From Macrostomum lignano (Eukaryota): a DNA stretch of 64,000 bases. The translations under genes were made by a program, and so were the position numbers. Every line of letters begins with the position of its first letter. Position 1 is the first letter of the stretch. The stretch covers positions 67,769 through 131,768 of the forward strand of contig NIVC01001998.1 of the NCBI GenBank assembly GCA_002269645.1, given 5' to 3'. Below, piece after piece: positions 876 to 64,000 of the stretch. The notes under the pieces are model-generated. The model worked only from the letters and a program-made list of their open reading frames with translations, was not told the origin of the DNA and did no database searches.

Positions 876-8676
<7,801 letters not shown>

Positions 8677-13319: not shown

Positions 13320-17953
<4,634 letters not shown>

Positions 17954-20182: not shown

Positions 20183-20316
20183 TATTCAATCGTATTTTCT
20201 CTCTCTTAGTCCATGTAAATTGGCACTTTATTTAACATCAGATTATAAGCAATATTACGACATCAAAATTCTTAGTTAATCGTACATTCAAAACTAGAGA
20301 CTAATACACCTATTTA

Positions 20317-23300
20317 ATGCCTGCCAATTGGAATGCGGTTCTACCAACTTGTCTAGCGATTACAATTTGTCTATTTTGCGCTTGCAACAAGTCTGGCTTC
20401 GCTTTAAAGTTGGACAACAATTTCTACGACCTCTTCAGCCTGTCGCGCATTTACGACCGCGTGAAATATGGTGATATTGCTCAGCTACACAAGGCCTATC
20501 AGGAATACCATATCAATGAGAACACGGCCCGGTTATTGTTCACTTTGGCTAGAGCTTTCACAACTACTAAAATTATGAGTGAAAAGGATTTTATACTGGC
20601 GTCTTACATAAGCTCCTCGCTTGATCCCAGCGTGTGCGACGACTACACCCGGTTTAGTAAGCATCAGCAGATCGATGTGCAATGCCACTTCCAAGCCTTT
20701 GTGGTAAGGGGGCCATGTAAATTTGCATGACAATTTTCATTGATTTTTATAATAGGGGCCAAATCAGAAGCAAAGAAAACTAAAGCATCGTATATATAGG
20801 ACGCGACACTCGAAATCTATCGAAAATGTTTAGAAAGTCACTTTTCGCCAAAAAATACACTCGAAGATAGGAAGTTTTCATTTTTTCAGCACAAAAAATT
20901 GTTATTGCTTTCGATAGGAGGCAGACCCAATGTTCATCTTTTGATATGATGTGCTGATACAAAATATCTGAATGTTGCAATTCAAAAATTAAAATAACGT
21001 GCTTTCCGTTACTACTCTACTTAAAATAGAAATGTAGGAAAAAAACGCCTAAAATAATGAAAACAACGCAAATGTAACACTATAAATTATCACGAAGTCA
21101 TCAAATCACAAAATCATACGAAAGTAAAACTTCATATTGAAAAAACCACCCTAAAAAATTCGGCAGACATGCGTGGAAGGCGTGCTCCAGAGACCAGCCG
21201 ACTGTCTAATGGCCAGCGAAGCCGATCGAGGCGACTGTCCTCAGGCGAAGCTGTGCAACTCTGCCTACAATCACGCAGCCGAAGGAGGCAAGGAAACTCG
21301 AGCCTGGCTGCAGCTGTGGGCCGAGGAGACAATGCAGGACCTCGTTAATTATCGGAACAACACACCGACAGAGATCGCCGCCATGCTGCGGAAGAGCTGC
21401 CTGCACGATTCTCAGTTCCTATCCGCCATCTACAATCTGGCCCTGTGCTCGGAGATTTCTAGGCAAGCCTCGCTGATGCATCCGAGGATAGTGCACCCGC
21501 TAGCTGAGATCTACTGCCCGGATCCCTGCCTGCGAAGGCCATGCGCTTCCAGGGCGCTGCGGCATCAGCTAATTAACACAGAGTGCTCATCACTGTCCAC
21601 TCGATGGGAGAGTAGGCACGCCATCGCGCACATGTGGGATGACTTGCAACTGCAGCTACAGCACGATATGCCACCGCAGTACACGTGAGTGCGATAACAC
21701 GGTTTACACTTGTTGACCTTGAAAGTCTCTTATAAAAGTATCTGGTGACCTTCAAGTAACATTGAAACTCTCTTATCAACGAATCATGCGACCTTGAAAT
21801 TCTCTTATCAAAGTATCTTGTGACCTTGAAAACCTCTTATCAAAGAGTCATGCGACCTTGAAATTCTCTTGTCAGGTATCTTGTGACCTTGAAGCCCTTT
21901 TATCAAAGAATCATATGACCTTGAAGTTCTCTTATCAAAGAATCATGCGACCTTGAAATTCTCTTGTCAGGTATCTTGTGACCTTGAAACCCTTTTATCA
22001 AAGTATCTTGCGACCTTGAATCTCTCCTATAAATGTTATTTAGAGAACTTGAAACTCTTGTGACCTTAAAATTATCTTATAAATGTATCTTGTGACCTAC
22101 ATGTAGCTTGAATTACTTGTATAAAAGTATCTTGGTACCTTGAAATTAAATCTCACCTGAAAGATTTGTACTACCCTTAAGAAATCATGTATTCTAGGTA
22201 AATCTTACAAAACTGACGCACAGTACCTGCGCCATTCCCAGATGCGCTTGCCGCTACGGCAGTTGGTCGCCAGTCAAGCAGGCTTGCGAACATGTTTCCG
22301 GAGGCGACTTTCGCACCTGCTCGCCAACCCTGGCCAACCGGTATTTCCCCTGCGACTCTGTCGGAACTGTGGCTTGCTACGAGAACAGCGAATCAGAGGA
22401 GATCCCATTCATCTGCCGCTGTCGCCCAGGCTTCGTTGGCGTGTTTTGTCACGAGAAAGTCAACTCCTGTCTGAACTTGGCTGTGGACGTCAAACTGCAT
22501 GGTAAATATTGAATCTATTGATAGTTTGCATAAATAAAACTATTGACCAGTGTTTGTTTGGAAGTGGTCTGAACTTTTTTTAAAAAACATGTTGGTTCAA
22601 GGGGCTTAAACATCAGGGGCTTTAGCAGCAGGGGCTTTAGCAGCAAGGGCTTTAGCAGCAGGGGCTTTAGCAGCAGGGGCTTTAGCAGCAAGGGCTTTAG
22701 CACCAGGGGCTTTAGCAGCAGGGGCTTTAGCATCAGGGGCGCCAGCACCAGGGGCTTTAGCAGCAGGGGCTTTAGCAGCAGGGGCTTTAGCAGCAGGGGC
22801 TTTAGCATCAGGGGCGCCAGCACCAGGGGCTTTAGCAGCAGGGGCTTTAGCAGCAGGGGCTTTAGCAGCAGGGGCTTTAGCACCAGGGGCTTTAGCAGCA
22901 GGGGCTTTAGCACCAGGGGCTTTAGCAGCAGGGGCTTTAGCAGCAGGGGCTTTAGCAGCAGGGGCTTTAGCAGCAGGGGCTTTAGCAGCAGGGGCTTTAG
23001 CAGCAGAGGCTTTAGCACCAGGGGCGCCAGCACCAGGGGCTTTAGCAGCAGGGGCTTTAGCAGCAGGGGCTTTAGCAGCAGGGGCTTTAGCAGCAGGGGC
23101 TTTAGCAGCAGGGGCTTTAGCAGCAGGGGCTTTAGCAGCAGGGCTTTAGCAGCAGAGGCTTTAGCACCAGGGGCCAGCACCAGGGGCTTTAGCAGCAGGG
23201 GCTTTAGCAGCAGGGGCTTTAGCAGCAGGGGCTTTAGCAGCAGGGGCTTTAGCAGCAGGGGCTTTAGCAGCAGGGGCTTTAGCAGCAGGGGCTTTAGCAG

Positions 23301-25536
23301 CAGGGGCTTTAGCAGCAGAGGCTTTAGCACCAGGGGCTTTAGCCATCTCATTTTTTCCAGCCGAATTCGCTCTTCTCCATGTCGCCCCTGGCTGCAATCC
23401 CCTGTCCTTTAAGCCAAAGTATGCAGAGCCAGATGTGGAAAAACTCAATCCGCAGGCACAACCCGTCGCATGTCGGGCAACCGGATGTGCAACGTGAATC
23501 ACGGAGGCGAGCCCTTAGCCAACTGGAACTCGCCCGTGAACACCTGCCAACCCGACCCGAAATCGCACGGCGGCTATAATTGTACCTGTGTTTCGCCATT
23601 CTACCGGCTGATTTACCTGGAGACGGACAATTGCCTGGGCGCTCGTCGGGCCTGCGACGCTGAGCTGTGCATCAACGGCGAGTGCGTCTCAACGCCCGAC
23701 AAGATGACCGCCAGCTCGTGCCGCTGCAGCCCCGGCTGGGCCGGCTCGCTATGCGACGTCCAGTTGGAGGACTGGAGCGTCTGGACCGGCTGCCGGCCTG
23801 TCTGCGGCGTCAACCGGACTCGACAGCGCCGGAGGCGCGGCGATAGGCGCCAATACGACCGAGTGTACGTGGAGACGGAGCTCTGCCCGAGCAGGTGGGC
23901 GCTTTCATATTTTTTTACTAAATCTTGGTGTTATACACTGGCTGACAAGCAGCCTCGTTGCAGCCAGCTTACAACAGGAGTCACAGGGACCTCTAGCCAG
24001 AGCCTCTGTAGCTGGCGCCCCCTCTGTAGCTGGCGCCCCCTCTGTAGCTGGCGCCCCCCTCTGTAGCTGGCGCCCCCTCTGTAGCTGGCGCCCCCTCTGT
24101 AGCTGGCGCCCCCTCTGTAGCTGGCGCCCCCTCTGTAGCTGGCGCCCCCTCTGTAGCTGGCGCCCCCTCTGTAGCTGGCGCCCCCCTCTGTAGCTGGCGC
24201 CCCTCTGTAGCTGGCGCCCCCTCTGTAGCTGGCGCCCCTCTGTAGCTGGCGCCCCCTCTGTAGCTGGCGCCCCCTCTGTAGCTGGCACCCCCTCTGTAGC
24301 TGGCGCCCCCTCTGTAGCTGGCGCCCCCTCTGTAGCTGGCGCCCCCCTCTGTAGCTGGCGCCCCCTCTGTAGCTGGCGCCCCTCTGTAGCTGGCGCCCCC
24401 TCTGTAGCTGGCGCCCCCTCTGTAGCTGGCGCCCCCTCTGTAGCTGGCGCCCCTCTGTAGCTGGCGCCCCCTCTGTAGCTGGCGCCCCCTCTGTAGCTGG
24501 CGCCCCCTCTGTAGGTGGCGCTCCCTCTGTAGCTGGCGCCCCCTCTGTAGCTGGCGCCCCCTCTGTAGCTGGCGCCCCCCTCTGTAGCTGGCGCCCCCCT
24601 CTGTAGCTGGCGCCCCCCTCTGTAGCTGGCGCCCCCTCTGTAGCTGGCGCCCCCTCTGTAGCTGGCGCCCCCCTCTGTAGCTGGCGCCCCCCTCTGTAGC
24701 TGGCGCCCCCCTCTGTAGCTGGCGCCCCCCTCTGTAGCTGGCGCCCCCTCTGTAGCTGGCGCCCCCCTCTGTAGCTGGCGCCCCCTCTGTAGCTGGCGCC
24801 CCCTCTGTAGCTGGCGCCCCCTCTGTAGCTGGCGCCCCCCTCTGTAGCTGGCGCCCCCCCTCTGTAGCTGGCGCCCCCTCTGTAGCTGGCGCCCCCTCTG
24901 TAGCTGGCGCCCCCTCTGTAGCTGGCGCCCCCTCTGTAGCTGGCGCCCCCTCTGTAGCTGGCGCTCTGTAGCTGGCGCCCCCCTCTGTAGCTGGCGCCCC
25001 CTCTGTAGCTGGCGCCCCCTCTGTAGCTGGCGCCCCCTCTGTAGCTGTCTGTAGCTGGCGCCCCCTCTGTAGCTGGCGCCCCCCTCTGGCTGTAGCTGGC
25101 GCCCCCCTCTGTAGCTGGCGCCCCCTCTGTAGCTGGCGCCCCCTCTGTAGCTGGCGCCCCCTCTGTAGCTGGCGCCCCCTCTGTAGCTGGCGCCCCCTCT
25201 GTAGCTGGCGCCCCCCTCTGTAGCTGGCGCCCCCTCTGTAGCTGGCGCCCCCCTCTGTAGCTGGCGCCCCCTCTGTAGCTGGCGCCCCCCTCTGTAAGCT
25301 AGAAACGGTACGTCTTTTCACTATCAGAAGGGTTGGCGTGCAAACTGCCGAATTTCAGGTCCTGCTACGCCGACACGAATGATCTGGAGTACTCGGCCTA
25401 CCAGACGCTGACCCACGCCACTAGCGCGGATGCCGCCGCCCTCACGGGCTGCGCACTGCTGGCTTTGCTCAGCTTTGTTGGCTTGCGATTCTGGCAGCCT
25501 CGATTTGCTGCCGTTGAGGGACAGCCAGCAAGCTGA
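20317..25536 (+). CDS. Secreted/GPI-anchored-type protein with EGF-like repeats and a thrombospondin type-1 motif
   Basis: Exons 20317-20703, 21167-21684, 22242-22501, 23456-23894 and ~25328-25536. Hydrophobic N-terminus. EGF motifs CRCRPGFVGVFC, CTCVSPF, CINGEC..CRCSPGWAGSLC. TSP1 motif WSVWTGCRPVCG..RTRQR. Hydrophobic C-terminal tail. Phase of the last junction is unresolved. Confidence 0.8.
21715..22150. repeat. Degenerate ~35-40-bp minisatellite (tgaccttgaa..cttatcaaag), intronic
   Basis: Recurrent gaccttgaa core. Confidence 0.85.
22605..23345. repeat. 15-bp minisatellite (ggggctttagcagca), intronic
   Basis: Direct reading. Confidence 0.97.
24005..25296. repeat. 18-21-bp minisatellite (ctgtagctggcg-Cn-t) with variable C-run, intronic
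   Basis: Direct reading. Confidence 0.97.
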
Positions 25537-26661: not shown

Positions 26662-29600
26662 TTACCAAGGCGCAAACATTGCCACAATCATTACCATTAC
26701 AGACGCAGCAAGGCTGCACTTTTTTCGGCTGCAACTGTTATTTCGATCGTCGTCGAGATTAACGTCGACAACATCGATTCCCAGATGTTGCAGCTCAGCC
26801 GTGGTTGGCACCGCTGTTGGATTGTCCAATTCAATCACGTTAGACGCTAAGCCGGTAACGTTGGCAGCGGAAATCGCCGTCACAGCTAGGAAGGTTTGGC
26901 TTAAACCGAGCGAACTAACTTGACTGAAGATGTTTGCGGATGCTTTTGGCGTTCTAAGTAGCTCCTGTGCGATTGAAAAGTTATTACCTAGCAACTGGCC
27001 AGGCGATGCAGCGAAACGAACCGAGTAAGCTGGTACGTCTGTTGGTTGAATTGAGACGAACAATTTCTAGTCGAATATAACGAGTTACAAATTTTCGACA
27101 ATAGAAAAACGAATACTGTTTTAATGACCACGATTCGTTGAAGAAAATCGAGTGTTCAAATTTGGTCCAAGAGTAACAAAATTCCTGTCTCTCTAAGTTT
27201 AATGGGAAACGAAACTTCTAATAGTAAACTTTTACAACCTTGTAATTATTATTTCTTCTAAAACTATTCGGGTTTGGTTTTAGTTGCGACCTTTTTTACT
27301 GTTGTTGTTCTATCATTTTTATTTGAAATTTGCGATTATCCTAGAAGTATAGCTGGCAATATTGAAACTAAGTGATGACATGACATGACATACTTGGACC
27401 GTCCGATTGTCCTGATGGATCTTCAACTGCCGTCCAGGATAGAAGCACAGTTCTGGTCGAGACGCTAACGCTCAATCTGAGGTCCGTGATCCGAACAGGC
27501 GCTGTCAGGCTCTTTTCAAAGCTCGGATTGCTATTAGCAACCGTCAGTTTGCCGGCTGAAGCAACCCGACTGAGCGGTGAGGTGCAAATTATTGAAACAG
27601 AATAGTCGCGAGAGATACTCACAGCGTCGGCTGGTATGTAACCGGAGTAAGTGCCGTCGTTTGCCTTCAGATCGGCTCCTGAATTGGTGTTAAAAGGTGA
27701 CTGATTTTAGTTTATTCGTTTAGAAAGCAAGGTCACAGGATAATTTTCCTCATTTTCAAGTTGGTATTTCAATATTCTATCATCAAGCTCATCAGATAAA
27801 TATAGCCCTCAAGAAAAACAAGACCTAGCAAAGTTTTCTAGCTTATATAGGAAATTTTCGCCCCCGTCGCAACCTACCGGCCCCATTGTCTGTCAGATTA
27901 AATCGAGCCACTCGACCTTCGTTTGACCTGACAGCGGCAAACAGCCGAGCCCCGGCAACCGGAGTGTAGCCTCGCATCAAGCGAGCATAAACGCCTATCA
28001 GTGTGCTCTCCGTCACTGCCTGCACCCAGTCTGGGATAACGTCACCGCTGAGCGTAGTGGGCAGATCCGCAGTTTCAGTAGCCGATACTGCAGGCGCTGG
28101 CCTCCCAGTAACGACAACCAGGCCGCTCCTGACGGTGTCAGCTTGCCTTCTGAATCGTCGGTAAACCCGGCGTCGCTGCCAGACCGAACTCGACGTAGCC
28201 GCCAGGTTTTCCAGCGACCAACGGCCAATCTAATTTTCACAATTGAAGCATTATAATAAAAAACTACTTCCTATACGACTTTCTGTCAGGCGGTACATGT
28301 AGTTCCGAGAGGACAGACAACTCACCACAATATCCTTGTCAGGAATCCGCACAGACACGGTGCCTGAAGCTGTGTCCACCGTGCAGGCACTGTTATCGCC
28401 AGCTCCGCTGCAGTTGAAGGACTTGCCGTTCGGCGATCGAACCATCAGCCGCAAGCTGGCCGCCGAGGCGGGCTCGGCGGGGAAGGACAGCACGAAAGCG
28501 AGGTCGCGACGAATCGACGAGTCGACATTGAATTCTAGACGACGTTGAAAATTTGGCCGGACCTCCTGAGTAGCCAGCTGAGGTAGTTTGTTAGGGGTAT
28601 TGCGTATTATTAATATGTTCTCTGAAAGGCGTCCAGAAGTGTTCACACTATATCTGTGACTTGGAGGATGGCTCTTATGGGCGTGAATCATGGTAGAGCA
28701 GCTTCGGGTGAATCGGCAGAATTGCCTCAGCGCTGGCTATGGACGATGACACCGAAGGTGAAGGCGTATGCCAGGGTGCCCACAGTTTGCTCTGCAACTC
28801 ACGGTGATGACTCTATCAGCAGCAGCCACCGCGGATGTGGTGCCGCCCAGCGACAGCCGCAGTCCCGCAGCCGCCAGCCCACCAGCGGCGTCGGCGCCGG
28901 CCGCTTCGCCAAAAAACTGACGACCTCCGGTGACATCGGCCAGACGCGACATCCGAGTGTCAGCTTGGTCGCCGTAGCGAACGGACACGACCTCCAGGCT
29001 GCTGGCAGCCAGTGCATTAATCGTCGCATCTAAAACGCCATCGCAGCCTTCTTCGCCGTCTGACAGGAGAATAATTTGTCCCGTAGAGCGACGATTCGGA
29101 CGATGCGGATTCACGCCTAGCAGCTGGTTGGCGAGGGGTTTTGTTTCTGGCATGGAGTCAACAGGTGATAAATCATTCGATGACTTCCCATGCATTGATC
29201 TGTAGTATACACCATCTACACCCCTGGTGCTGGCGCCCCTGGTGCTGGCGCCCCTGGTGCTGGCGCCCCTGGTGCTGGCGCCCCTGGTGCTGGCGCCCCT
29301 GGTGCTGGCGCCCCTGGTGCTGGCGCCCCTGGTGCTGGCGCCCCTGGTGCTGGCGCCCCTGGTGCTGGCGCCCCTGGTGCTGGCGCCCCTGGTGCTGGCG
29401 CCCCTGGTGCTGGCGCCCCTGGTGCTGGCGCCCCTGGTGCTGGCGCCCCTGGTGCTGGCGCCCCTGGTGCTGGCGCCCCTGGTGCTGGCGCCCCTGGTGC
29501 TGGCGCCCCTGGTGCTGGCGCCCTGGTGCTGGCGCCCCTGGTGCTGGCGCCCCTGGTGCTGGCGCCCCTGGTGCTGGCGCCCCTGGTGCTGGCGCCCCTG

Positions 29601-32600
29601 GTGCTGGCGCCCCTGGTGCTGGCGCCCCTGGCTGGCGCCCTGGTGCTGGCGCCCCTGGTGCTGGCGCCCCTGGTGCTGGCGCCCCTGGTGCTGGCGCCCC
29701 TGGTGCTGGCGCCCTGGTGCTGGCGCCCCTGGTGCTGGCGCCCCTGGTGCTGGCGCCCCTGGTGCTGGCGCCCCTGGTGCTGGCGCCCCTGGTGCTGGCG
29801 CCCCTGGTGCTGGCGCCCCTGGTGCTGGCTCCCCTGGTGCTCAACCTGGTGCTAAAGCCCCTGGTGCTAAACCTGTTGCTGGCGCCCCTGGTGCTAAACC
29901 TGGTGCTAAAGCCCCTGGTGCTAAACCTGTTGCTGGCGCCCCTGGTGCTAAACCTGGTGCTAAAGCTCCTGATGCTTAAACCAGGTGCTAAAGCCCCTGA
30001 TGCTTAAGCTAGGTGCTAAAGCCCCTGGTGTTAAACCTGGTGCTAAAGCCCCTGGTGTTAAACCTGGTGCTAAAGCCCCTGATGCTAAACCTGGTGCTAA
30101 AGCCCCTGGTGCTGGCGCTCCTGTTGCTAAGTAGCTCGTAGCTTGTACATTACACAACACAGTAATTCTCCCTCACCTGCATAGCCCGCTGAACAGCTCC
30201 ACCAATGCAGGTGCCACCTTTTGCCTTCAGGCCAGAGACAGCTTGCGCCAGTCGCTGTCTTGCAGCCGGTGAATCAATCGTTAGAAAATTTACCAGCACA
30301 GTGGCTTTTCTGTTGAAGCTGATCAGTGCGCACTCTGCTCCATTTTCCAGTACCTCAGTTAGGAACTGGTTGACTGCACCGATCATGTTGCTGATGCGGC
30401 TGTCCTGCGTGGTTCGATGGCGAATCTCTGTGTATTTTGGATTATATTTCGGTAATCTGAGGGTACCTTTAAAAAGGACGAATCTCGGGAGTACCTTAGT
30501 GAAGAATCTCGGGAGTATCTCATGGTAAGGAATCTCGGGGTTTGGTGACGAATCTCGGGGTATCTTGGTGACGAATCTCGGGAGTACCTTATGACGAATC
30601 TCGGGAGTATCTGGTACGAATCTCGGGAGTATCTTGGTACGAATCTCGGGAGTATCTTGGTGACGAATCTCGGGGTATCTTGGTGACGAATCTCGGGAGT
30701 ATCTTGGTGACGAATCTCGGGTATCTTGGTGACGAATCTCGGGAGTATCTTGGTGACGAATCTCGGGAGTATCTTGGTGACGAATCTCGGGAGTATCTTG
30801 GTGACGAATCTCGGGAGTATCTTGGTGACAAATCTCGGGAGTATCTTGGTGACAAATCTCGGGGTATCTTGGTGACAAATCTCGGGGTATCTTGGTGACA
30901 AATCTCGGGGTATCTTGGTGACGAACCTCAGGGTATCTTGGTGGCTAATATCGGGGTATATTGGTGACGAATCTGTGGGTATCTTAGTGGCGAATCTCGG
31001 GGTATCTTTGAAGTGACTCTTGTGGTATCTTTTTAGCTGCATTTATACTCACGCTACCCATGCTGCCTGAGGTATCCATGACAACCACCACGCGTCGCTT
31101 TTCAGACTCGGCTACCAGCTGAAATCGAACCCCAGAATCATCGGCCGGTCCACTTCTCGGGCCGTCAACATCTCTTTGAAAATCTTCGTGCATCCTGACA
31201 ATCTCAGCCGCGCTCAGGCCTCCGCAGTGCCTGTTGAGCAGATTGTCGGCGCCTCTGTTGTGCACCAGCTTGGGATTCGATACCCGACTGACGGAGTCGC
31301 AGAATGCAGCGACCCCGGAGCTGTAGGGCGCGAATAAGAATGATGCAGCGTTTGAGTCCGGCAGCTCCGTCACCTCTATGCTGCAGTTGTCGCTCAGCTG
31401 TTTCGTGTCAGCATTGAAGGCGCAGCGGCGACTGGCACCGTTGCCTGCGGGAACTCGCAGCTCAGTTTGCAGAGCCGGGCTGCAGGATGCTGTCCTGTAC
31501 TGGCGAGTGCTAGCAGAAGTGGCCACGGTCTGCAGCAGGCTGCCTAATGGGGCCTCGCTCAACAGGCCCCAGCGGTATTGCGAGAAGTACAGGGCGAGGC
31601 GCCGGCCCACTGTGAGTAATTATCAGGGGGGGGGCATTGTTGGTTGAGTTCAGGTTGGAAGTTTGTCAGCTTTGCGATTGGCAAGATAGAGACTCAAGGT
31701 GAAAATTTCAGAGTCAACGTGTCATGGTGTCAGGGCTCCATCATCCTCTGCTCCCTCATCCTCCACTCCCTCATCCTCTGCTCCCTCATCCTCTGCTCCC
31801 TCATCCTCCACTCCCTCATCCTCCACTCCCTCATCCTCTGCTCCCTCATCCTCCACTCCCTCATCCTCCACTCCCTCATCCTCCACTCCCTCATCCTCCA
31901 CTCCCTCATCCTCCACTCCCTCATCCTCCACTCCCTCATCCTCTGCTCCCTCATCCTCCACTCCCTCATCCTCCACTCCCTCATCCTCTGCTCCCTCATC
32001 CTCTGCTCCCTCATCCTCTGCTCCCTCATCCTCCACTCCCTCATCCTCCACTCCCTCATCCTCTGCTCCCTCATCCTCTGCTCCCTCATCCTCCACTCCC
32101 TCATCCTCCACTCCCTCATCCTCCACTCCCTCATCCTCCACTCCCTCATCCTCCACTCCCTCATCCTCCACTCCCTCATCCTCTGCTCCCTCATCCTCTG
32201 CTCCCTCATCCTCTGCTCCCTCATCCTCCACTCCCTCATCCTCCACTCCCTCATCCTCCACTCCCTCATCCTCCACTCCCTCATCCTCCACTCCCTCATC
32301 CTCCACTCCCTCATCCTCTGCTCCCTCATCCTCTGCTCCCTCATCCTCTGCTCCCTCATCCTCTGCTCCCTCATCCTCCACTCCCTCATCCTCCACTCCC
32401 TCATCCTCTGCTCCCTCATCCTCCACTCCCTCATCCTCTGCTCCCTCATCCTCTGCTCCCTCATCCTCTGCTCCCTCATCCTCCACTCCCTCATCCTCCA
32501 CTCCCTCATCCTCTGCTCCCTCATCCTCCACTCCCTCATCCTCTGCTCCCTCATCCTCTGCTCCCTCATCCTCTGCTCCCTCATCCTCTGCTCCCTCATC

Positions 32601-35600
32601 CTCCACTCCCTCATCGTCCACTCCCTCATCCTCTGCTCCCTCATCCTCTGCTCCCTCATCCTCTGCTCCCTCATCCTCTGCTCCCTCATCCTCCACTCCC
32701 TCATCCTCCACTCCCTCATCCTCCACTCCCTCATCCTCCACTCCCTCATCCTCTGCTCCCTCATCCTCCACTCCCTCATCCTCCACTCCCTCATCCTCCA
32801 CTCCCTCATCCTCCACTCCCTCATCCTCTGCTCCCTCATCCTCTGCTCTCTCATCCTCTGCTCCCTCATCCTCTGCTCCCTCATCCTCCACTCCCTCATC
32901 CTCTGCTCCCTCATCCTCTGCTCCCTCATCCTCTGCTCCCTCATCCTCTGCTCCCTCATCCTCCACTCCCTCATCCTCTGCTCCCTCATCCTCTGCTCCC
33001 TCATCCTCTGCTCCCTCATCCTCTGCTCCCTCATCCTCTGCTCCCTCATCCTCTGCTCCCTCATCCTCTGCTCCCTCATCCTCTGCTCCCTCATCCTCTG
33101 CTCCCTCATCCTCCACTCCCTCATCCTCCACTCCCTCATCCTCTGCTCCCTCATCCTCTGCTCCCTCATCCTCTGCTCCCTCATCCTCCACTCCCTCATC
33201 CTCCACTCCCTCATCCTCCACTCCCTCATCCTCCACTCCCTCATCCTCCACTCCCTCATCCTCCACTCCCTCATCCTCCACTCCCTCATCCTCCACTCCC
33301 TCATCCTCTGCTCCCTCATCCTCTGCTCCCTCATCCTCTGCTCCCTCATCCTCCACTCCCTCATCCTCCACTCCCTCATCCTCCACTCCCTCATCCTCCA
33401 CTCCCTCATCCTTCACTCGCTCATCCTCCACTCCCTCATCCTCTGCTCCCTCATCCTCTGCTCCCTCATCCTCTGCTCCCTCATCCTCTGCTCCCTCATC
33501 CTCTGCTCCCTCATCCTCCACTCCCTCATCCTCCACTCCCTCATCCTCTGCTCCCTCATCCTCCACTCCCTCATCCTCTGCTCCCTCATCCTCAGCTCCC
33601 TCATCCTCTGCTCCCTCATCCTCTCTCATCCTCACTCCTCATCACTCCCTCATCCTCTGCTCCCTCATCCTCTGCTCCCTCATCCTCTGCTCCCTCATCC
33701 TCTGCTCCCTCATCCTCCACTCCCTCATCCTCACTCCCTCATCCTCCACTCCCTCATCCTCCACTCCCTCATCCTCTGCTCCCTCATCCTCCACTCCCTC
33801 ATCCTCCACTCCCTCATCCTCCACTCCCTCATCCTCCACTCCCTCATCCTCTGCTCCCTCATCCTCTGCTCTCTCATCCTCTGCTCCCTCATCCTCTGCT
33901 CCCTCATCCTCACTCCCTCATCCTCTGCTCCCTCATCCTCTGCTCCCTCATCCTCTGCTCCCTCATCCTCTGCTCCCTCATCCTCCACTCCCTCATCCTC
34001 TGCTCCCTCATCCTCTGCTCCCTCATCCTCTGCTCCCTCATCCTCTGCTCCCTCATCCTCTGCTCCCTCATCCTCTGCTCCCTCATCCTCCACTCCCTCA
34101 TCCTCCACTCCCTCATCCTCCACTCCCTCATCCTCCACTCCCTCATCCTCTGCTCCCTCATCCTCCACTCCCTCATCCTCCACTCCCTCATCCTCTGCTC
34201 CCTCATCCTCTGCTCCCTCATCCTTCCCTCCTTCATCCTCCGCTCCTTCATCCTCCTCCCTTGCATCCTTCACTCCTCTGTTCCTTCCCTAGCTTTGCAG
34301 GTAAATAAAATGTATAGCCCCTTTTTAATACCTACAGTTACTACTAAAGGTTACTAAACTAAGTAGTCACACTAGGATTCACTTTTCATGACACACTCTA
34401 AGTGAGGTGGCAGAGTCACACCATGGAATCTGAGAGTCACACCATGGAATCTGGGAGTCACACCATGAAATCTGAGGGTCACATCATGGAATCGAGAGTC
34501 ACACCATAGAATCTGAGTGAGGTGGCAGAGAGTCGCACCATGGAATCTGAGATGCACACCATGGAATCTGAGATTCACACCATGGAATCTGAGATGCACA
34601 CCATGGAATCTGAGATTCACACCATGGAATCTGAGATGCACACCATGGAATCTGGGAGTCACACCATGAAATCTGAGGGTCACATCATGGAATCGAGAGT
34701 CACACCATAGAATCTGAGTGAGGTGGCAGAGAGTCGCACCATGGAATCTGAGAGTCACACCATAGAATCCGAGTGAGGTGGCAGCGAGTCACACCATAGA
34801 ATCTGAGTGAGGTGGCAGAGAGTCGCACCATGGAATCTGAGAGTCACACCATAGAATCCGAGTGAGGTGGCAGCGAGTCACACCATAGAATCTGAGTGAG
34901 GTATCAGGGTGCACCACTTGCCCAGCAATGGTCACTAAGACTCACAATTATCGCTATTCTGAGGCTCCAAACTCTCTGTCGCAAGCAGCACTCGCAGCGC
35001 AGGCCTTGCGCAGCCGGCCACCACAGATTCCGGACCCTCATTCCCCATAGCCAGATCCGGACTGGCAAAGAAATCCGCTCTGTCGCGCCTGTGCCAGTCG
35101 GCTGGAAGCGGGTGCAGCCGGGAGCCTCGGGGGTACACTTGGGCGAGTTGGCGACCTAGTCGAGCCGACACCAGCACGCTGACGTCCCCGAAGCTCAGTC
35201 GGCATCCAACTTGTTCAGTGAGAGATGCCAAAATGCCAGAGGCTTGCTCAAAGCCTGCCTGATTTTGGAAAAGGAAAAGTACATGATGATACAAGTTCAA
35301 GCTACACAAAGCGGTACTCTCTCAGCTACACAAAGCGGCACTCTCTCAGCTACACAAAGCGGCACTCTCTCAGCTACACAAAATGGCACTCTCTCAGCTA
35401 CACAAAGTGGCACTCTCAGCTACACAAAGTGGCACTCTCAGCTACACAAAGTGGCACTCTCTCAGCTACACAAAGTGGCACTCTCTCAGCTACACAAAGT
35501 GGCACTCTCTCAGCTACACAAAGTGGCACTCTCTCAGCTACACAAAGTGGCACTCTCAGCTACACAAAGTGGCACTCTCTCAACTACACAAAGTGGCACT

Positions 35601-36601
35601 CTCTCAGCTACACAAAGTGGCACTCTCTCAGCTACACAAAGTGGCACTCTCTCAGCTACACAAAGTGGCACTCTCAGCTACACAAAGTGGCACTCTCTCA
35701 GCTACACAAAGTGGCACTCTCTCAGCTACACAAAGTGGCACTCTCTCAGCTACACAAAGTGGCACTCTCTCAGCTACACAAAGTGGCACTCTCTCAGCTA
35801 CACAAAGTGGCACTCTCAGCTACACAAAGTGGCACTCTCAGCTACACAAAGTGGCACTCTCAGCTACACAAAGTGGCACTCTCTCCTACACAAAGTGGCA
35901 CTCTCTCCTACACAAAGTGGCACTCTCTCAGCTACACAAAGTGGCACTCTCAGCTACACAAAGTGGCACTCTCTCAGCTACACAAAGTGGCACTCTCAGC
36001 TACACAAAGTGGCACTCTCTCAACTACACAAAGTGGCACTCTCTCAGCTACACAAAGTGGCACTCTCTCAGCTACACAAAGTGGCACTCTCTCAGCTACA
36101 CAAAGTGGCACTCTCTCAGCTACACAAAGTGGCACTCTCTCAGCTACACAAAGTGGCACTCTCAGCTACACAAAGTGGCACTCTCTCAACTACACAAAGT
36201 GGCACTCTCTCAGCTACACAAAGTGGCACTCTCAGCTACACAAAGTGGCACTCTCAGCTACACAAAGTGGCACTCTCAGCTACACAAAGTGGCACTCTCA
36301 GCTACACAAAGTGGCACTCTCAGCTACACAAAGTGCACTCTCTCAGCAACAAAAAGTGACACTCTAAGCTTCCAGCCATATAGAGAAGTGATGCTGAGGA
36401 TACCCGGATGTTCTGTAGCAGCAAGGCGTACTGCTCCACTGACAGTGAAGTTGCAGAATCTTCCTCCAAGAACACCAGCAGCTTCCTATAGCGACCATTA
36501 GTCAGGCGAAGCTCGCTCCTTTCGCTAGCAACAAAGTCTGGCTGAGTCGCGATGCAGATTGAGATCAAAACAGTCAGTGCAATGCTTTGGTTTAGAAGCA
36601 T
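26662..36601 (-). CDS. CLCA: CLCA-family (calcium-activated chloride channel regulator-like) protein, ~960 aa, with degenerate HExxH
   Basis: Phase-consistent exons 36404-36601, 34946-35258, 31053-31609, 30177-30404, 28803-29123, 28326-28577, 27878-28229, 27394-27678, 26662-27038. Signal peptide; NGRYRKLLV; YRWG..E; FCD..HN..N..C; vWA motifs VVVVMDTSGSMG, GGTCIG, ILLSDGEE; DNGAGADLKANDGTYS; FN3 motif PVRITDL..LSWTA; hydrophobic C-terminus. Confidence 0.92.
29222..30120. repeat. 15-bp minisatellite (cccctggtgctggcg, grading into cccctggtgctaaag), intronic
   Basis: Direct reading. Confidence 0.97.
30475..31010. repeat. 21-24-bp minisatellite (gaatctcgggagtatcttggtgac), intronic
   Basis: Direct reading. 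Confidence 0.93.
31737..34260. repeat. 15-bp two-variant minisatellite ctcatcctc(CA/TG)ctcc, ~165 units, intronic
   Basis: Direct reading. Confidence 0.98.
34415..34895. repeat. 21-bp minisatellite (caccatggaatctgagagtca) with larger duplicated blocks, intronic
   Basis: Direct reading. Confidence 0.9.
35298..36355. repeat. 20/22-bp minisatellite (ctcagctacacaaagtggcact[ct]), intronic
   Basis: Direct reading. Confidence 0.97.
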
Positions 36602-37324: not shown

Positions 37325-37581
37325 TGTTAAAGAAATAATCAAGTCTAATAAATCTGAGGGTTAGACTTTAACAAAAAAAACAGGTAAATGTGCCCTGTGG
37401 CTAAATTATTGCTTATATATTAAATTAAATCGATGTTCTCTCTCTCCAACTCTCTGACTCAACAACGCCTCACGCACATCAACCCCACCCCAACACACTC
37501 TGAGACGGGGACCGCCAAGTGTACACTGGCGACGCTACACATAGCAGAGGGTCGGTACGCAGGCACTCCAAATCCAATACA
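37325..37581 (-). repeat. 3' LTR (257 bp)
   Basis: Matches the 5' LTR apart from an extra 110 bp (37433-37542), one substitution and one A-run difference. Confidence 0.95.
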
Positions 37582-37950
37582 CTCCCCCTAATGATGCTTC
37601 ATCATTACAGTAGTTAACATTGATATTCGAAAAAAGAAACTCGCTATTAACTTAAATGAAATTAAACGAAACGAATAGCAAAAAACAAACGAACAACAAA
37701 AAACGCTCCAACATTACAACAGACTTACAACAGACAACATGACTAAAAATGTGACACACCATCACCAGAGTACTGAGTTAACGAAAAAGTAGGAACAAAG
37801 GGAAAACGAAACTCAAAAAAAACGCGTGAAGTCGGAGGGCTCCGGAGGGCTCGGAGGGCTCTCGGAGGGAGTGAAAATTACTGCGAACTAAAACTAAACA
37901 GAAACTCGAAACAACGATTAGAACAGTCATTGAAAGTCAGTTACTTAAGT

Positions 37951-40900
37951 TCATTCAGTCACAGCTTCCAGCAAAATCAGGTTCTCCACCGGTCGGCGAA
38001 TCAAGCATCTCCTGGGACCGCGGCCAGGTCTGGGCGCGACTCGAACCGTTGCAGATCTCACCGCCCCGTCTCGGCCAGGATGCACCGACTCGATGACACC
38101 GGTACACCATGTAAGCCTCGGCTGCCCGGCCTCACCTTTCACCAGGACGATGTCGCCGGCCGTAGCTTCTCGAGTTACGCCATGCTTGGGACTTAGATTA
38201 TGTTCTCGCAGGCTGGTCAGATACTGTCGCTCCCAGCAGTCCCAGAAGGCTTGCAGTCTGGCGCGCATTCGCCTCAGCAGTGTTGGCAACGGCAGCAGGA
38301 GCTCGGGCGTACCGCTAGAAGTTGGCTCCGCCGTTAGCCGTTGCAGGACCAGAAAGTGCGCCGGCGTCAGGACTTCTCCGTTGGTTTCGGCATCCACGTA
38401 GAGTAGAGGCCGACTGTTGAGCACCGCTTCCACCTCCATTAGCACTGTCCGCAGTTCGTCCAGCGTCAGGGTTGCGTTGAGGATGGTCTTGCGCAAAGCC
38501 AGCTTGATGTCCCTCATCAGTCGCTCCCAGAAGCCTCCTTGCCACGGTGCGCGTTCGACGATGAATTGCCAGGTGATTTTCCTGGTGGCGCAGAAGTCTT
38601 GAACTTGTCGACTCTCCGACGCCTGAAGTATTTTGGCAGCCTTGGTGAATGTCTTGGCGTTGTCACTGATGAGATTGGGAATTCCTCTCCGAGCACAGAA
38701 CCGTCGGAGGGCTCGCAGGAAGGTCTCGGTCGTCAAGTCGCTCACCAGTTCCAGGTGAAGGGCTCGCGTGGCCGCACAGGTGAAAACCAGGATATAGCCT
38801 TTCTCGATCTCTGTGTCCTCCATCAGTTTGACAGGTCCGCAGTAGTCGAGTCCGCACCACTCAAAGGCTCTCCCAGACTTCACGCGTGCTTCAGGTAAGG
38901 CTGGGATTTGCTTCACTGCATATGGTAGTCCTTGAAGACGTCTGCAGACAAAGCAACTTCTCAGGATCGACTTGACTCGCTGTCTTCCTCTGATTAGCCA
39001 GAATCTCTCTCGCAGCTTACAAAGAGTGCTGGGCACTCCCCCGTGCAGAACCTTGGCGTGAGCGTCCCAGATGAGAAGAAGCTCCAGGTGTGACTTGCTC
39101 GGGATCAGAATCGGACAGTCAACCTCGGCAGAGGCGTTGGACTCCTTCAATCGACCTTGGCTTCGGAGAATACTCTTGTTGTCGAGAAAAAGATTCAACT
39201 GCCTGCTGAGATCTGTACTGGCCGCTGACTCCTGAATGTGAGCAATTTCGGCTTGAAAACTCCGTTTCTGCACTTCTCGCAGCCAGCGCTCTTCAGCTTC
39301 AAGGACTTCTGCTGCAGCCAGTGGTCCCACTCGCTCCTCCCCCGCTGCAGAAGTTCTAGCTTGCAGGTTTCTGACGAAGCGTAGGACATAGGCTGTCACC
39401 CGAATCAGCTTGATCCAGGATGAGAAGTTCGTGTCATTGAGAACTTCCTGTAGACTGATGTCAGGACCGGCTTCAGTTAGCAGAACAACTGGACGGTTCG
39501 CTTGTGTCTTCTGCTCCTCGGCAACTGCCGCTGTCGGTAAGCTGAGAAAGGATTGGTCGGGCCAATCGTCAGGAGGTCGTGCCAGCCAGTCTGGACCGTG
39601 CCACCAGCTGTCGTCCGCCTTCAACTTGCTCGCTGATGTTCCTCGAGATGCAACGTCCGCCGGATTCTCCTCGCCTGGGACATGTCTCCAGGCATCCTCT
39701 GGCACCAGGCGGCGGATCTCCGTCACCCGATTATGAACAAAGAGCTTCCAGGGTCTGTGCTGCCGGATCCAGTAGAGCGTGTCGGCACTGTCTGTCCAGC
39801 AAAACACCTGGCGAACCTGAGGATACTGACTCATGGATGATGTCAACAGTCTGGCGAGTATCAAGGCACCCAGGAGTTCGAGCCGAGGAATTGAAAGAAC
39901 CGACAGTGGAGCCACTCTCGCCTTGGCGGCCACCAGGTTGCAGCTGACGGAACCATCGGTGTACTGCACTCGCAGGTAAAGACACGCCGCATAGCATTTG
40001 ATTGACGCATCACAGAACCCATGCAGCTGTATCTCCTCGACCTCCTTCGTCGCCGAAAGCACCAACCTTGGAACTTGAAATCGACCTGCCAGCATCTCCT
40101 GCAACCACTTCAGCCACTGCTGCTTAATCGGCTCCTTTAGCGGGCAGTCCCAAGCGATCTTTTCAACGCACAGCTTCTGGAACATCGATTTCGGCAACGT
40201 AAGCAGCGGAACCAGGAAGCCCAGAGGATCGTAGACACGGGCCAGCAGCTGTAGCACGACACGCTTGGAGGGCGACGCCTTGAGCAAATCTTCTGGCGGA
40301 GAAAACTGCAGCACGAACACGTCCGATCCTGTCTCCCATCGCAGCCCGAGGACTTTTGACGATACGCCATCTTCGCCCAAGGAGGCGGCTGAATAGCTGG
40401 AGGGGTCCTCCGTGATGTCCTTCGTCACCGCCGACAACGCCGGAGCAAGAACATCACTGTCAAGTGTGCTGGCGCGAACCACTTTCAATACATTTTTGCT
40501 GTTGGACTGCCAGTGTCGCAGATTCATTCCGGCCTGTTGGAATATGTGCCGTGATTTTTGGATGAGATCCAGGGCCTGCTGTTCATCCACGCACCCAGAG
40601 ATCAGGTTGTCTACATAGATTTCTTTGGACACCTTATCCACGAACTCTGCATGCTGGCCTCGGTGAGATGCCAAGTGGTGTTGAATGACAGTCTCCAGGA
40701 CGGCAGGTGAGCAGGTGAGTCCGAACACCAGAGCAGCGTAGCGCAGAACAACGAGAGGTGAATCAGCTTGACTGGGATCCCGTGGCCAGAGGAATCGTAG
40801 AGCATCGCGGTCGTCTTCTGCAATTCGGATCTGCAAAAAAGCCTTCTCAATATCGGCAGTCAAGGCGATCGGATGAAGTCGAAATGCCTGAAGCAGTCGC

Positions 40901-43401: not shown

Positions 43402-43471
43402 GCTGTTGTTGAAAAATCGCTGAGTCACTGTAGCACTCTTGCGCTCACTGCTTGATTTTACTGTGATTTTG

Positions 43472-43483
43472 GTTCGGGCGCCA
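43472..43483 (-). other. Primer-binding site TGGCGCCCGAAC (tRNA-Lys(UUU)-type, 12 nt)
   Basis: Immediately inside the 5' LTR; identical to the first 12 nt of the classic tRNA-Lys3 PBS TGGCGCCCGAACAGGGAC. Confidence 0.75.
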
Positions 43484-43629
43484 TGTTAAAGAAATAATCA
43501 AGTCTAATAAATCTGAGGGTTAGACTTTAACAAAAAAACAGGTAAATGAGCCCTGTGGCTAAATTATTGCTTATATATTAAATTAAATCGAGCAGAGGGT
43601 CGGTACGCAGGCACTCCAAATCCAATACA
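43484..43629 (-). repeat. 5' LTR (146 bp)
   Basis: Direct repeat of the 3' LTR, adjacent to the PBS. Confidence 0.95.
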
Positions 43630-63972: not shown

Positions 63973-64000
63973 GTAAGTTAGCATATCCGCAGAACTTTTG

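What the first reader, a model, noticed from the sequence alone, without database searches (positions are those of the whole stretch)
31540..31609. CLCA homolog with the zinc-metalloprotease HExxH motif replaced (pseudo-protease)
CLCA proteins carry GRxxVHEWAHLRWGVFDEY, which is required for autoproteolysis. Here the aligned text is GRRLALYFSQYRWGLLSEA, so both His ligands and the catalytic Glu are gone. The gene is otherwise intact over 9 exons and the vWA MIDAS residues (DTSGS, T, D) are retained. This points to a non-catalytic CLCA repurposed for adhesion or channel regulation.
Basis: partly seen in the sequence, partly recalled or inferred. Interest (0 to 1): 0.72.

Follow-up and report, generated by a model that had tools for sequence, protein, structure and literature searches.

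The report
Catalytically dead CLCA-like flatworm gene
This is an intact gene of the flatworm Macrostomum lignano for a CLCA-type surface protein that has lost its zinc-protease active site and its self-cleavage loop; such "dead" CLCAs were described in 2013, so it is a well-documented new example, not a new kind of thing.

Summary
On the minus strand, window 31607-31551 encodes GRRLALYFSQYRWGLLSEA. In the CLCA consensus HExxHxxxGxxDEY, both His, the catalytic Glu and the Asp are replaced (L177, Y178, Q181, S188); G185 and E189 are kept.

The gene has 9 GT-AG exons (36601-26662) and encodes 960 aa. It has a CLCA_N domain, a VWA domain with a complete MIDAS, and a short hydrophobic C-terminal tail. 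No alternative HExxH exon exists in the window.

The organism is Macrostomum lignano. A 98.5%-identical second copy (PAA58881.1) has the same structure and motif.

- **Family trait.** At least six paralog groups form one clade (93-100% bootstrap), and all lack HExxH. All also lack the 40-55-residue linker that carries the canonical R/ALY cleavage site.
- **Conservation.** The replaced motif is the most conserved block among the close paralogs.
- **Intact paralog.** The same genome keeps an intact HEWGH paralog (Mlig024754) as sister to the clade.
- **Caveat.** The two recent copies differ with dN/dS of about 0.9-1.1.
- **Prior work.** Substituted-site CLCAs are known (Lenart et al. 2013: 28% of CLCA_N members, at least 5 independent losses).

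Verdict: a real pseudo-protease and a new member of a known kind. Its function is not established. Interest is about 0.3.

The parts
26662..36601 (-). Whole CLCA-like gene: 9 coding exons, 960 aa, from ATG at 36601 to the stop codon ending at 26662
   Evidence: Gene model built; all introns are GT-AG. It aligns end to end with M. lignano paralogs. The exon structure is identical to PAA58881.1/P0160 on NIVC01002323.1.
36404..36601 (-). Exon 1: signal peptide (MLLNQSIALTVLISICIA...) and the start of the CLCA_N domain
   Evidence: the hydrophobic N-terminus is read directly from the sequence
34946..35258 (-). Exon 2: N-terminal half of the CLCA_N (protease-like) domain; phase-1 donor
31053..31609 (-). 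Exon 3: former active-site helix, Cys-rich subdomain and the start of VWA, including DTSGS of the MIDAS (31076-31062)
31551..31607 (-). Substituted zinc-site motif GRRLALYFSQYRWGLLSEA. It corresponds to the consensus HExxHxxxGxxDEY, here LYxxQxxxGxxSEA.
   Evidence: It is the most conserved 15-aa window among the four close paralogs (0.82 versus a mean of 0.36). It lies in predicted helix 165-184 with pLDDT about 95.
30177..30404 (-). Exon 4: VWA domain, with MIDAS Thr421 at 30212-30210
28803..29123 (-). Exon 5: VWA domain, with MIDAS Asp454 at 29060-29058
28326..28577 (-). Exon 6: beta-sheet-rich domain
27878..28229 (-). Exon 7: beta-sheet-rich domain. It includes the copy-group-specific multibasic insert RRRVYRRFRR (aa 642-651, about 28175-28146).
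   Evidence: pLDDT in the insert is 55-68, suggesting an exposed loop
27394..27678 (-). Exon 8: carries the conserved DNGAGAD...DGTYS block and the junction SVSIICT|SPLSRVASAG. In canonical CLCAs the 40-55-aa linker with the R/ALY self-cleavage site sits at this junction; here it is absent.
26662..27038 (-). Exon 9: FnIII-like C-terminal domain and a 14-residue hydrophobic tail (SVMVMIVAMFAPW) with no cytoplasmic extension, followed by the stop codon
   Evidence: helix 943-956. A GPI-signal-like or tail-anchor role is inference only.

Best explanation
The locus is a real, structurally intact gene of Macrostomum lignano. It encodes a secreted or membrane-tethered CLCA-family glycoprotein that cannot act as a zinc metalloprotease and does not undergo canonical CLCA self-cleavage.

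**Shown**
- The consensus HExxHxxxGxxDEY reads LYxxQxxxGxxSEA, so both His ligands, the catalytic Glu and the Asp are replaced.
- The linker that carries the canonical R/ALY cleavage site is deleted.
- The protease-like fold elements, six conserved cysteines, a complete VWA MIDAS and the C-terminal beta-rich domains are retained.
- The gene belongs to a flatworm-specific clade of at least six paralog groups. All lack HExxH and the linker. The clade's sister is an intact-HExxH CLCA in the same genome.
- The former active-site helix is the most conserved segment among the close paralogs.

**Inferred**
- After a duplication in the Macrostomum lineage, one copy lost its zinc ligands and cleavage loop. 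The Glu is still present in the deeper branches (RELSI, YEFGQ) and was lost later in the core group (L[YHF]FSQ). The clade then expanded.
- The protein works as a single-chain, non-catalytic binding module. The MIDAS-bearing VWA domain would engage a ligand in a metal-dependent way, as in CLCA1-TMEM16A. The dead catalytic domain would serve as a conserved structural or binding surface.
- Any maturation cleavage would have to come from another protease. One candidate is a furin-type convertase acting at the exposed RFRR insert.
- The tail suggests a GPI or tail anchor.
For: - Motif and coordinates.
- Gene model with 9 GT-AG exons and 960 aa. The identical structure occurs in an independent copy.
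- Pfam CLCA_N and VWA above cut-off. Match to the hCLCA1 VWA structure at E 6.7e-11. Foldseek TM 0.85-0.89, rmsd 2.9 A.
- MIDAS residues aligned with canonical CLCAs.
- Only one HExxH in six frames of the whole window, and it lies in a LINE element outside the gene.
- All M. lignano close paralogs carry L[YFH]FSQ[YF]RWGL.
- NJ clade support 100/95/93%, with HEWGH protein P0084 as sister. P0084 is M. lignano Mlig024754g1.
- The linker with the ALY site is absent in the whole clade but present in penguin CLCA1, Apodemus CLCA4B and P0084. The site is defined as QNR/ALY and RSR-ALY in PMC9007345.
- An E->Q change in HExxH abolishes cleavage in CLCA2 and in chicken CLCA1.
- The motif window ranks first in conservation among close paralogs.
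- AlphaFold model with pLDDT 87.5 and pTM 0.87; the motif lies in a confident helix.
- The GenBank annotation of the sister copy is transcript-derived.
- Differences between the two copies avoid paralog-conserved columns (P=0.024), with only 1 of 30 in the VWA domain.
Against: - Between the window copy and its 98.5%-identical sister copy, dN/dS is 0.93 (NG86) to 1.15 (YN00), from 30 nonsynonymous and 11 synonymous codon differences. An omega of 0.3 or less is rejected (P<1e-3). Recent constraint therefore looks weak, at least outside exons 3-6.
- The window copy has a young LTR retrotransposon 724 bp upstream of its ATG. It also has an R85C change at a paralog-conserved Arg. This particular copy could be silenced or decaying.
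- Expression of this copy, as opposed to its 95% transcript cluster, was not shown.
- No functional, zinc-binding or cleavage data exist.
- Foldseek found no solved zincin matching the N-terminal domain, so retention of the protease fold rests on the Pfam match and model confidence only.
- The furin-site idea rests on a motif present in only 2 of 5 paralog groups.
Confidence: 0.62

Rival explanations
1. This particular copy, or the whole Mlig006068 copy group, is a redundant duplicate drifting toward pseudogene status in a neopolyploid genome. The missing HExxH would then be an inherited family trait, and the copy itself would no longer be under selection.
For: dN/dS between the two copies is 0.93-1.15, and omega<=0.3 is rejected. 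A young BEL/Pao LTR element with near-identical LTRs lies 724 bp upstream of the ATG in the window copy only. R85C creates an unpaired Cys at a conserved Arg. The assembly holds 180 Mb of duplicated blocks at >=95% identity, and UniRef lists n=3 for the sister protein.
Against: Both copies keep a full 960-codon ORF and all 16 splice sites. Derived changes are symmetric between the copies (12 versus 8). The changes avoid conserved columns (P=0.024), and the VWA and motif exons are nearly identical (3 differences in 1358 nt). dN/dS is known to be inflated at such short divergence (general knowledge). The paralog clade shows strong long-term conservation.
Confidence: 0.2
2. The protein is a substrate, decoy or partner of the catalytically intact M. 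lignano paralog (Mlig024754/Mlig010743). It would be cleaved or regulated in trans, by analogy with trans-cleavage of CLCA2 E165Q by wild-type CLCA2.
For: An intact HEWGH paralog exists in the same genome and is the sister lineage. Intermolecular cleavage and stable precursor complexes are documented for CLCA2.
Against: The linker that carries the canonical cleavage site is deleted in the whole clade. No co-expression data exist.
Confidence: 0.1
3. The protein is still a hydrolase that uses a non-canonical site, for example the retained invariant E189 together with Q181 or Y178.
For: E189 is invariant in 98 of 98 aligned CLCAs. The helix is hyper-conserved.
Against: Leu cannot ligate zinc. Single E->Q or His mutations already abolish cleavage in vertebrate CLCAs. 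The residues at the three key positions differ among clade members (LYxxQ, LHxxQ, LFxxQ, RExxI, YExxQ), which does not fit a new fixed catalytic constellation.
Confidence: 0.03
4. The apparent loss is an artefact: a sequencing or assembly error, a wrong exon choice or a misalignment.
For: Nothing found supports this; the motif is unchanged in every independent source checked.
Against: Exon 3 in an independent contig differs at only 2 of 557 nt and has an identical motif. Five further paralog groups carry the same type of motif. No HExxH occurs in any frame of the gene region. The alignment is anchored by invariant RWG and E.
Confidence: 0.01

Closest known systems
CLCA_N-domain proteins with substituted HExxH sites (Lenart, Dudkiewicz, Grynberg & Pawlowski 2013, PLoS One 8:e62272; PMC3650047)
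   Same: The domain family is the same (Pfam PF08434 plus VWA). The HExxH is replaced while the surrounding RWG..E signature is kept. The loss is lineage-specific and conserved rather than random. In my sample of the 140 closest representatives, 36 (26%) are substituted, matching their 28%.
   Different: The paper appeared before the M. lignano genome assembly used here (2017), so this clade was probably not sampled; I did not check its sequence lists. Here the first His is Leu, rather than the Arg/Lys pattern they highlight. The catalytic Glu is also lost. The clade additionally lacks the cleavage-site linker. It coexists with an intact sister paralog.
Vertebrate CLCA1/CLCA2/CLCA4, self-cleaving zinc metalloproteases that regulate TMEM16A, TMEM16B or Orai1
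   Same: The overall architecture matches: signal peptide, CLCA_N with a Cys-rich part, VWA with MIDAS, a beta-sheet-rich domain, an FnIII-like domain and, as in CLCA2/4, a hydrophobic C-terminus. The VWA fold superposes on hCLCA1 6pyo (TM 0.85-0.89).
   Different: There is no HExxH, no Asp of the DEY triplet and no R/ALY cleavage linker. The gene has 9 exons versus 14. Identity is about 21-25%. Channel regulation is untested.
M. lignano Mlig024754g1 / Mlig010743g1 (P0084), the intact-HExxH CLCA of the same genome
   Same: It comes from the same species, is the sister lineage in the NJ tree and shares the architecture and the MIDAS.
   Different: P0084 keeps HEWGH, the DE pair, the long linker, and a transmembrane segment with a cytoplasmic tail.
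Catalytically inactive ADAM family members (ADAM11/22/23) and other pseudo-proteases such as iRhoms. This is an analogy from general knowledge, not tested here.
   Same: A metalloprotease-like domain without zinc ligands is retained in a cell-surface protein that acts through binding rather than catalysis.
   Different: The fold family is unrelated and there is no homology. The binding role of the Macrostomum proteins is only inferred.

Membership tests
CLCA_N domain family (Pfam PF08434), i.e. CLCA homologs in the broad sense | Significant match to the CLCA_N profile above the curated cut-off | tested here: met
   39.5 bits versus a cut-off of 25.6, E 5.9e-10, aa 55-316. A profile search returns canonical CLCAs from urchins, amphioxus, molluscs and birds.
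CLCA_N domain family (Pfam PF08434) | VWA domain with a MIDAS (DxSxS, T, D) directly after CLCA_N | tested here: met
   VWA_2 E 7.5e-16 at aa 344-456. DTSGS, T421 and D454 align to the hCLCA1 MIDAS.
CLCA_N domain family (Pfam PF08434) | C-terminal beta-sheet-rich and FnIII-like domains, with the conserved DNGxGAD...DGxYS block | tested here: met
   End-to-end alignment with 97 CLCAs; D737, G739, D743, D748, G749 and Y751 are (near-)invariant. The model shows beta-rich domains from 538 to 930. Pfam itself reports no FN3 hit.
Self-cleaving CLCA zinc metalloproteases (vertebrate CLCA1/2/4 type) | HExxH zinc-binding and catalytic motif within HExxHxxxGxxDEY | tested here: not met
   The sequence is LYFSQYRWGLLSEA: H->L, E->Y, H->Q, D->S, Y->A. 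No alternative HExxH exon exists.
Self-cleaving CLCA zinc metalloproteases (vertebrate CLCA1/2/4 type) | Canonical cleavage site (xxR/ALY) in the linker between the beta-sheet-rich and FnIII domains | tested here: not met
   The linker is absent in the window protein and in the whole clade. The site definition comes from PMC9007345.
Self-cleaving CLCA zinc metalloproteases (vertebrate CLCA1/2/4 type) | Zinc-dependent autoproteolysis into N- and C-terminal fragments | not testable with these tools
   This requires expressed protein.
Self-cleaving CLCA zinc metalloproteases (vertebrate CLCA1/2/4 type) | Potentiation of TMEM16-type Ca-activated chloride currents, or of SOCE, through the VWA MIDAS | not testable with these tools
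   This requires electrophysiology or binding assays.
Zincin-like fold (Peptidase_MA-type) | Structural similarity of the N-terminal domain to solved zincin metalloproteases | tested here: inconclusive
   The models are confident (pLDDT 87.5 and 90.4). However, the top 50 Foldseek PDB matches are all VWA-type and no zincin appears. The published fold assignment is itself weak (FFAS Z -6.3, 11% identity).
Substituted-site ('inactive') CLCA_N subgroup of Lenart et al. 2013 | CLCA_N domain with at least one of H, E, H replaced, conserved within a lineage | tested here: met
   All three residues are replaced. The replacement is conserved in 4 close paralog groups, and variants occur in 2 deeper ones.

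The most novel reading that the evidence does not exclude
A flatworm-specific, expanded clade of CLCA pseudo-proteases has co-ordinately lost the zinc ligands and the self-cleavage linker, yet holds the former active-site helix under the strongest constraint in the protein. That would imply the dead catalytic cleft has become a dedicated ligand- or substrate-binding surface. It might, for example, act as a protease-dead trap or regulator paired with the intact paralog Mlig024754. In some members, maturation may have been handed over to furin-type convertases, at the RFRR or RRKR inserts in an exposed loop.
Probability: 0.25. Interest if true: 0.5.

Novelty: new member of a known kind. Interest (0 to 1): 0.3.

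Why it matters
CLCA proteins are studied mainly in mammals, where self-cleavage is considered the switch that unmasks the VWA domain for channel regulation. This is a natural, expanded clade that has discarded both the catalytic site and the cleavage loop but kept the MIDAS, and it sits next to an intact paralog in a transgenesis- and RNAi-amenable model flatworm. It therefore offers a ready-made comparison for asking what CLCA domains do without proteolysis. It also adds a well-resolved case to the catalogue of conserved pseudo-proteases. It does not overturn anything: the existence of such CLCAs has been known since 2013.

Tried and rejected
I used an alignment of session proteins plus the exon-3 translation instead.
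2. The second word-indexed homolog search, using an N-terminal-domain alignment, aimed to list named flatworm CLCAs with intact HExxH. It returned only more M. lignano fragments and a few others. The intact paralog was found instead through the NJ tree and a cluster look-up.
3. Foldseek of the full-length model and of a 417-aa N-terminal paralog model against the PDB gave only VWA matches. There is therefore no structural confirmation of a zincin fold. No full-length CLCA structure appears in the PDB copy.
4. A control dN/dS from neighbouring genes shared by the two copies had too few or gapped differences to be useful.
5. Literature searches for Macrostomum plus CLCA, and for Mlig006068, found nothing.
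6. Rfam and tRNA scans of the window found nothing.
7. I considered whether the exon-7 basic insert is an unrecognised intron. The only GT..AG candidate is 40 nt, which is out of frame, and the insert is present in the transcript-based sister annotation. I rejected this idea.
8. I tested whether the window copy alone is accumulating derived changes. The counts are symmetric, 12 versus 8, so this was rejected.
Full report
**1. What is in the sequence**

The finding lies on the minus strand. The reverse complement of window 31609-31551 reads (L)GRRLALYFSQYRWGLLSEA. Stop-to-stop frames on the minus strand between 36.6 and 26.6 kb contain nine CLCA-like segments. I joined them at GT-AG sites that preserve the frame:

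| Exon | Window coordinates (minus strand) |
|---|---|
| E1 | 36601-36404 |
| E2 | 35258-34946 |
| E3 | 31609-31053 |
| E4 | 30404-30177 |
| E5 | 29123-28803 |
| E6 | 28577-28326 |
| E7 | 28229-27878 |
| E8 | 27678-27394 |
| E9 | 27038-26662 |

The CDS is 2883 nt and encodes 960 aa with no internal stop. Pfam finds CLCA_N (39.5 bits, cut-off 25.6) at aa 55-316 and VWA at aa 344-503. The only solved structure matched by sequence is the human CLCA1 VWA domain, 6pyo (E 6.7e-11).

The MIDAS residues D349-x-S351-x-S353, T421 and D454 align with those of hCLCA1 and other CLCAs. The N-terminus is a typical hydrophobic signal sequence. The C-terminus is a 14-residue hydrophobic tail with no cytoplasmic extension. 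Both readings come from the sequence itself; an anchor role for the tail is inference.

**2. Is the motif really replaced?**

The published CLCA consensus is HExxHxxxGxxDEY, with the Asp or the second Glu proposed as a further zinc ligand (PMC3650047). In an hmmalign of 140 relatives and in a 98-sequence MAFFT alignment, the window residues fall in register: R183, W184 and G185 are near-invariant and E189 is invariant.

The window therefore has L177 for His1, Y178 for the catalytic Glu, Q181 for His2, S188 for Asp and A190 for Tyr. Only G185 and E189 are kept.

A six-frame scan of all 64 kb finds a single HExxH. It lies at 16112 on the minus strand, in a LINE element outside the gene. No alternative exon can supply the motif.

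**3. Organism and independent confirmation**

The best homologs are all from the free-living flatworm Macrostomum lignano. A cluster look-up found PAA58881.1 (BOX15_Mlig006068g1, P0160), also 960 aa.

Its locus on NIVC01002323.1 (L001) has the same nine exons and splice sites. It differs from the window CDS at 42 of 2883 nt, giving 30 aa differences, and the motif is identical.

The GenBank annotation of that assembly is derived purely from RNA-seq-based transcripts. The assembly contains 180 Mb of blocks duplicated at >=95% identity (PMC5730564). The 95% transcript cluster to which this gene belongs is therefore expressed. Expression of the window copy itself was not shown.

**4. The loss is a clade trait, not a quirk of this gene**

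The close M. lignano paralogs are 41-45% identical and read as follows:

| Protein | Motif |
|---|---|
| P0001/P0003 | VALFFSQYRWGLLSE |
| P0002, P0070 | LTLHFSQYRWGL(H/Y)(S/I)E |
| P0004/5, P0011, P0127, P0170 | MALYFSQFRWGLFSE |

Two deeper members also lack HExxH. P0028 (Mlig010915) reads RELSI, and P0023, an unnamed Logan transcript, reads YEFGQ.

An NJ tree on 892 columns with 100 bootstraps gives 100% for the four core groups, 95% after adding P0028 and 93% after adding P0023. The sister is P0084, which reads HEWGH. P0084 is M. lignano Mlig024754g1/Mlig010743g1. It has 1051 aa, an intact HExxH and DE pair, a long linker, a transmembrane segment and a cytoplasmic tail. The next lineage out is a sponge (Oscarella) CLCA with HEFGH.

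I infer the following order of events. A duplication occurred within the flatworm lineage. One copy lost its zinc ligands, while the Glu is still present in P0028 and P0023. The core group later lost the Glu as well, and the clade expanded.

**5. A second, unreported loss: the self-cleavage loop**

Canonical CLCAs are cut at xxR/ALY: QNR/ALY after R705 in chicken CLCA1 and RSR-ALY at 696 in Xenopus (PMC9007345). Human CLCA2 is cut at residue 708. E165Q abolishes that cleavage, and the mutant can be cut in trans by wild-type protein (PMC10669480).

In my alignment, penguin CLCA1 (P0076...KQNRALYIPGY...) and Apodemus CLCA4B (P0054) carry this site in a 40-55-residue linker. The linker lies between the 'GRYS.KV' strand and the 'FSRxxSGG' strand. 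In the window protein, P0160, P0002-4, P0028 and P0023 the linker is missing entirely (SVSIICT|SPLSRVASAG). It is present in P0084.

Loss of both the enzyme site and its substrate site in the same clade is coherent with abandonment of autoproteolysis.

**6. Selection**

*Long term.* Among the four close paralog groups, the 15-aa window LYFSQYRWGLLSEAP scores 0.82 mean pairwise identity against a protein mean of 0.36. It ranks first, above the MIDAS blocks. With all six clade members, the best window overlapping the motif (FSQYRWGLLSEAPLG) is again the top-ranked block. The replaced helix is therefore constrained, not decaying.

*Short term.* The window copy versus P0160 gives Nd 30.5, Sd 11.5 and dN/dS 0.93 (NG86) or 1.15 (YN00). 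An omega of 0.3 or less is rejected at P<1e-3.

- The differences are patchy. Exons 3-6, which hold the motif, the Cys-rich part, the VWA domain and part of the beta-sheet-rich domain, have 3 differences in 1358 nt. The other exons have 39 in 1525 nt. Intron 5, inside the quiet block, is also nearly identical. Part of the pattern may therefore reflect recent gene conversion.
- The amino-acid differences avoid paralog-conserved columns (P=0.024), and only one lies in the VWA domain.
- Derived states are split evenly between the copies, 12 versus 8.

I read this as relaxed constraint on very young redundant duplicates. dN/dS is expected to be inflated in that situation (general knowledge).

**7. 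Structure**

AlphaFold2 of P0160 with the 98-sequence alignment gives pLDDT 87.5 and pTM 0.87. The motif lies in helix 165-184 with pLDDT about 95. Residues 641-658 have pLDDT 55-68.

Foldseek against the PDB returns only VWA-type matches. The best domain match is hCLCA1 6pyo (TM 0.85-0.89, rmsd 2.9 A). A 417-aa N-terminal paralog (P0170) was modelled at pLDDT 90.4 and again matched only VWA structures.

The zincin fold of the N-terminal domain is therefore neither confirmed nor refuted by structure search. The published assignment is itself remote (FFAS Z -6.3).

**8. Mechanism**

*Shown.*
- There are no zinc ligands and no catalytic Glu.
- There is no canonical cleavage site.
- The MIDAS is intact.
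- The ex-active-site helix is conserved.
- The protein has a secretory signal.

*Inferred.* The protein is a single-chain, non-catalytic extracellular protein, tethered by a GPI anchor or its hydrophobic tail. It would act by binding, most plausibly through the VWA MIDAS as in CLCA1-TMEM16A. The dead catalytic domain would be kept as a structural or binding surface.

*Speculative lead.* Exon 7 of this copy group carries a multibasic insert, RRRVYRRFRR (aa 642-651), in a low-confidence and presumably exposed loop. P0028 has RRKRS in the same loop, and the other paralogs have neither. A furin-type convertase could therefore process some members.

**9. Comparison with what is known**

Lenart et al. 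2013 surveyed HExxH families. [quoted passage not shown] My own sample agrees: 104 intact and 36 substituted among the 140 closest representatives that cover the motif. The substituted group includes urchin REWGR and RNWGY, oyster HQWGR and starfish YEWGQ forms.

The window gene is thus a member of the CLCA_N homologous family and of its known substituted-site subgroup. It is not a member of the self-cleaving CLCA metalloproteases, because two defining features were tested and not met. Functionally, the nearest analogies are inactive ADAMs and other pseudo-proteases. That comparison is from general knowledge and was not tested.

**10. Verdict**

The pseudo-protease reading is supported. The 'adhesion or channel regulation' part is untested.

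The additions from this analysis are:
- the species;
- the full gene model and a second copy;
- the clade-wide nature of the loss;
- the intact sister paralog;
- the co-deleted cleavage loop;
- hyper-conservation of the replaced helix;
- the dN/dS caveat.

Novelty: new member of a known kind. Interest: 0.3.

**Housekeeping**

In one search a temporary file holding the upstream retroelement region was written for a self-BLAST to locate its LTRs. It was deleted. No element sequence was printed beyond about 80-nt junctions.

Noticed in passing
window 37325-43629 (-): A BEL/Pao-type LTR retrotransposon with one uninterrupted 1844-aa gag-pol frame (43485-37954; Peptidase_A17, DUF1759, RVT_1, Integrase_H2C2, DUF5641). 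It has TG..CA ends, a 5-bp target duplication GTTGT and short LTRs that are 98-100% identical. It sits 724 bp upstream of the CLCA-like ATG. It is absent from the sister copy, where L001 around position 9311 shows the empty site. Older gene predictions (P0006, P0176) fuse its ORF to CLCA exons 1-2.
   Followed up: partly
window 29221-36365 (introns 1-4 of the gene): The introns are mostly minisatellites: 24-bp x46 (35300-36365), 15-bp x168 (31735-34255), 23-bp x23 (30477-31008) and 15-bp x46 (29221-29895). Intron lengths differ strongly between the two gene copies: 1145 vs 1846, 3336 vs 2006, 648 vs 817 and 1053 vs 1243 nt.
   Followed up: partly
window 28146-28175 (-), exon 7, aa 642-651: A multibasic insert, RRRVYRRFRR, is present in both copies of this gene but absent from the closest paralogs. 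It lies in a low-pLDDT loop. The deeper paralog P0028 has RRKRS at the same loop. These may be convertase sites.
   Followed up: partly
window 36349-36347 (-), codon 85: The window copy has Cys85, whereas the sister copy and four paralogs have Arg. This gives an odd, seventh cysteine in the N-terminal domain.
   Followed up: no
window 13323-18025 (-): A LINE-type non-LTR retrotransposon (endonuclease, RT and RNase H frames, with frame breaks). It is shared with the sister contig at 99.3% identity.
   Followed up: no
window ~56284-64000 (+), possibly from ~44900: A large cadherin-repeat gene (FAT/dachsous-like; three Cadherin domains in 60512-61411 alone). It runs off the end of the window.
   Followed up: no
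window ~20300-24063 (+): A small EGF-domain gene that also has a TSP1-like WSxW stretch. It corresponds to the 593-aa gene called next to the sister copy (L001 20911-24187) and is nearly identical between the copies.
   Followed up: no
window 46686-50341 and many others (1328-1957, 3204-4200, 5019-6351, 22600-23343, 24003-25296, 52275-53972, 54736-55116): Tandem-repeat density is very high across the window. The largest array is a 16-bp unit repeated about 227 times over 3.6 kb. This fits the report that 15% of the M. lignano genome is simple or tandem repeats.
   Followed up: no
proteins P0007/P0010/P0013/P0066 (Diadema), P0014/P0016/P0020 (P0014 = Lytechinus; P0016 and P0020 not named here): Sea urchins carry separate groups of substituted CLCAs (REWGR in the Diadema group; RNWGY, RNWAR and RIWAY in the group that includes Lytechinus P0014) alongside intact ones (P0015, P0032). 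Pseudo-protease CLCAs coexisting with active paralogs therefore looks like a recurrent pattern.
   Followed up: partly
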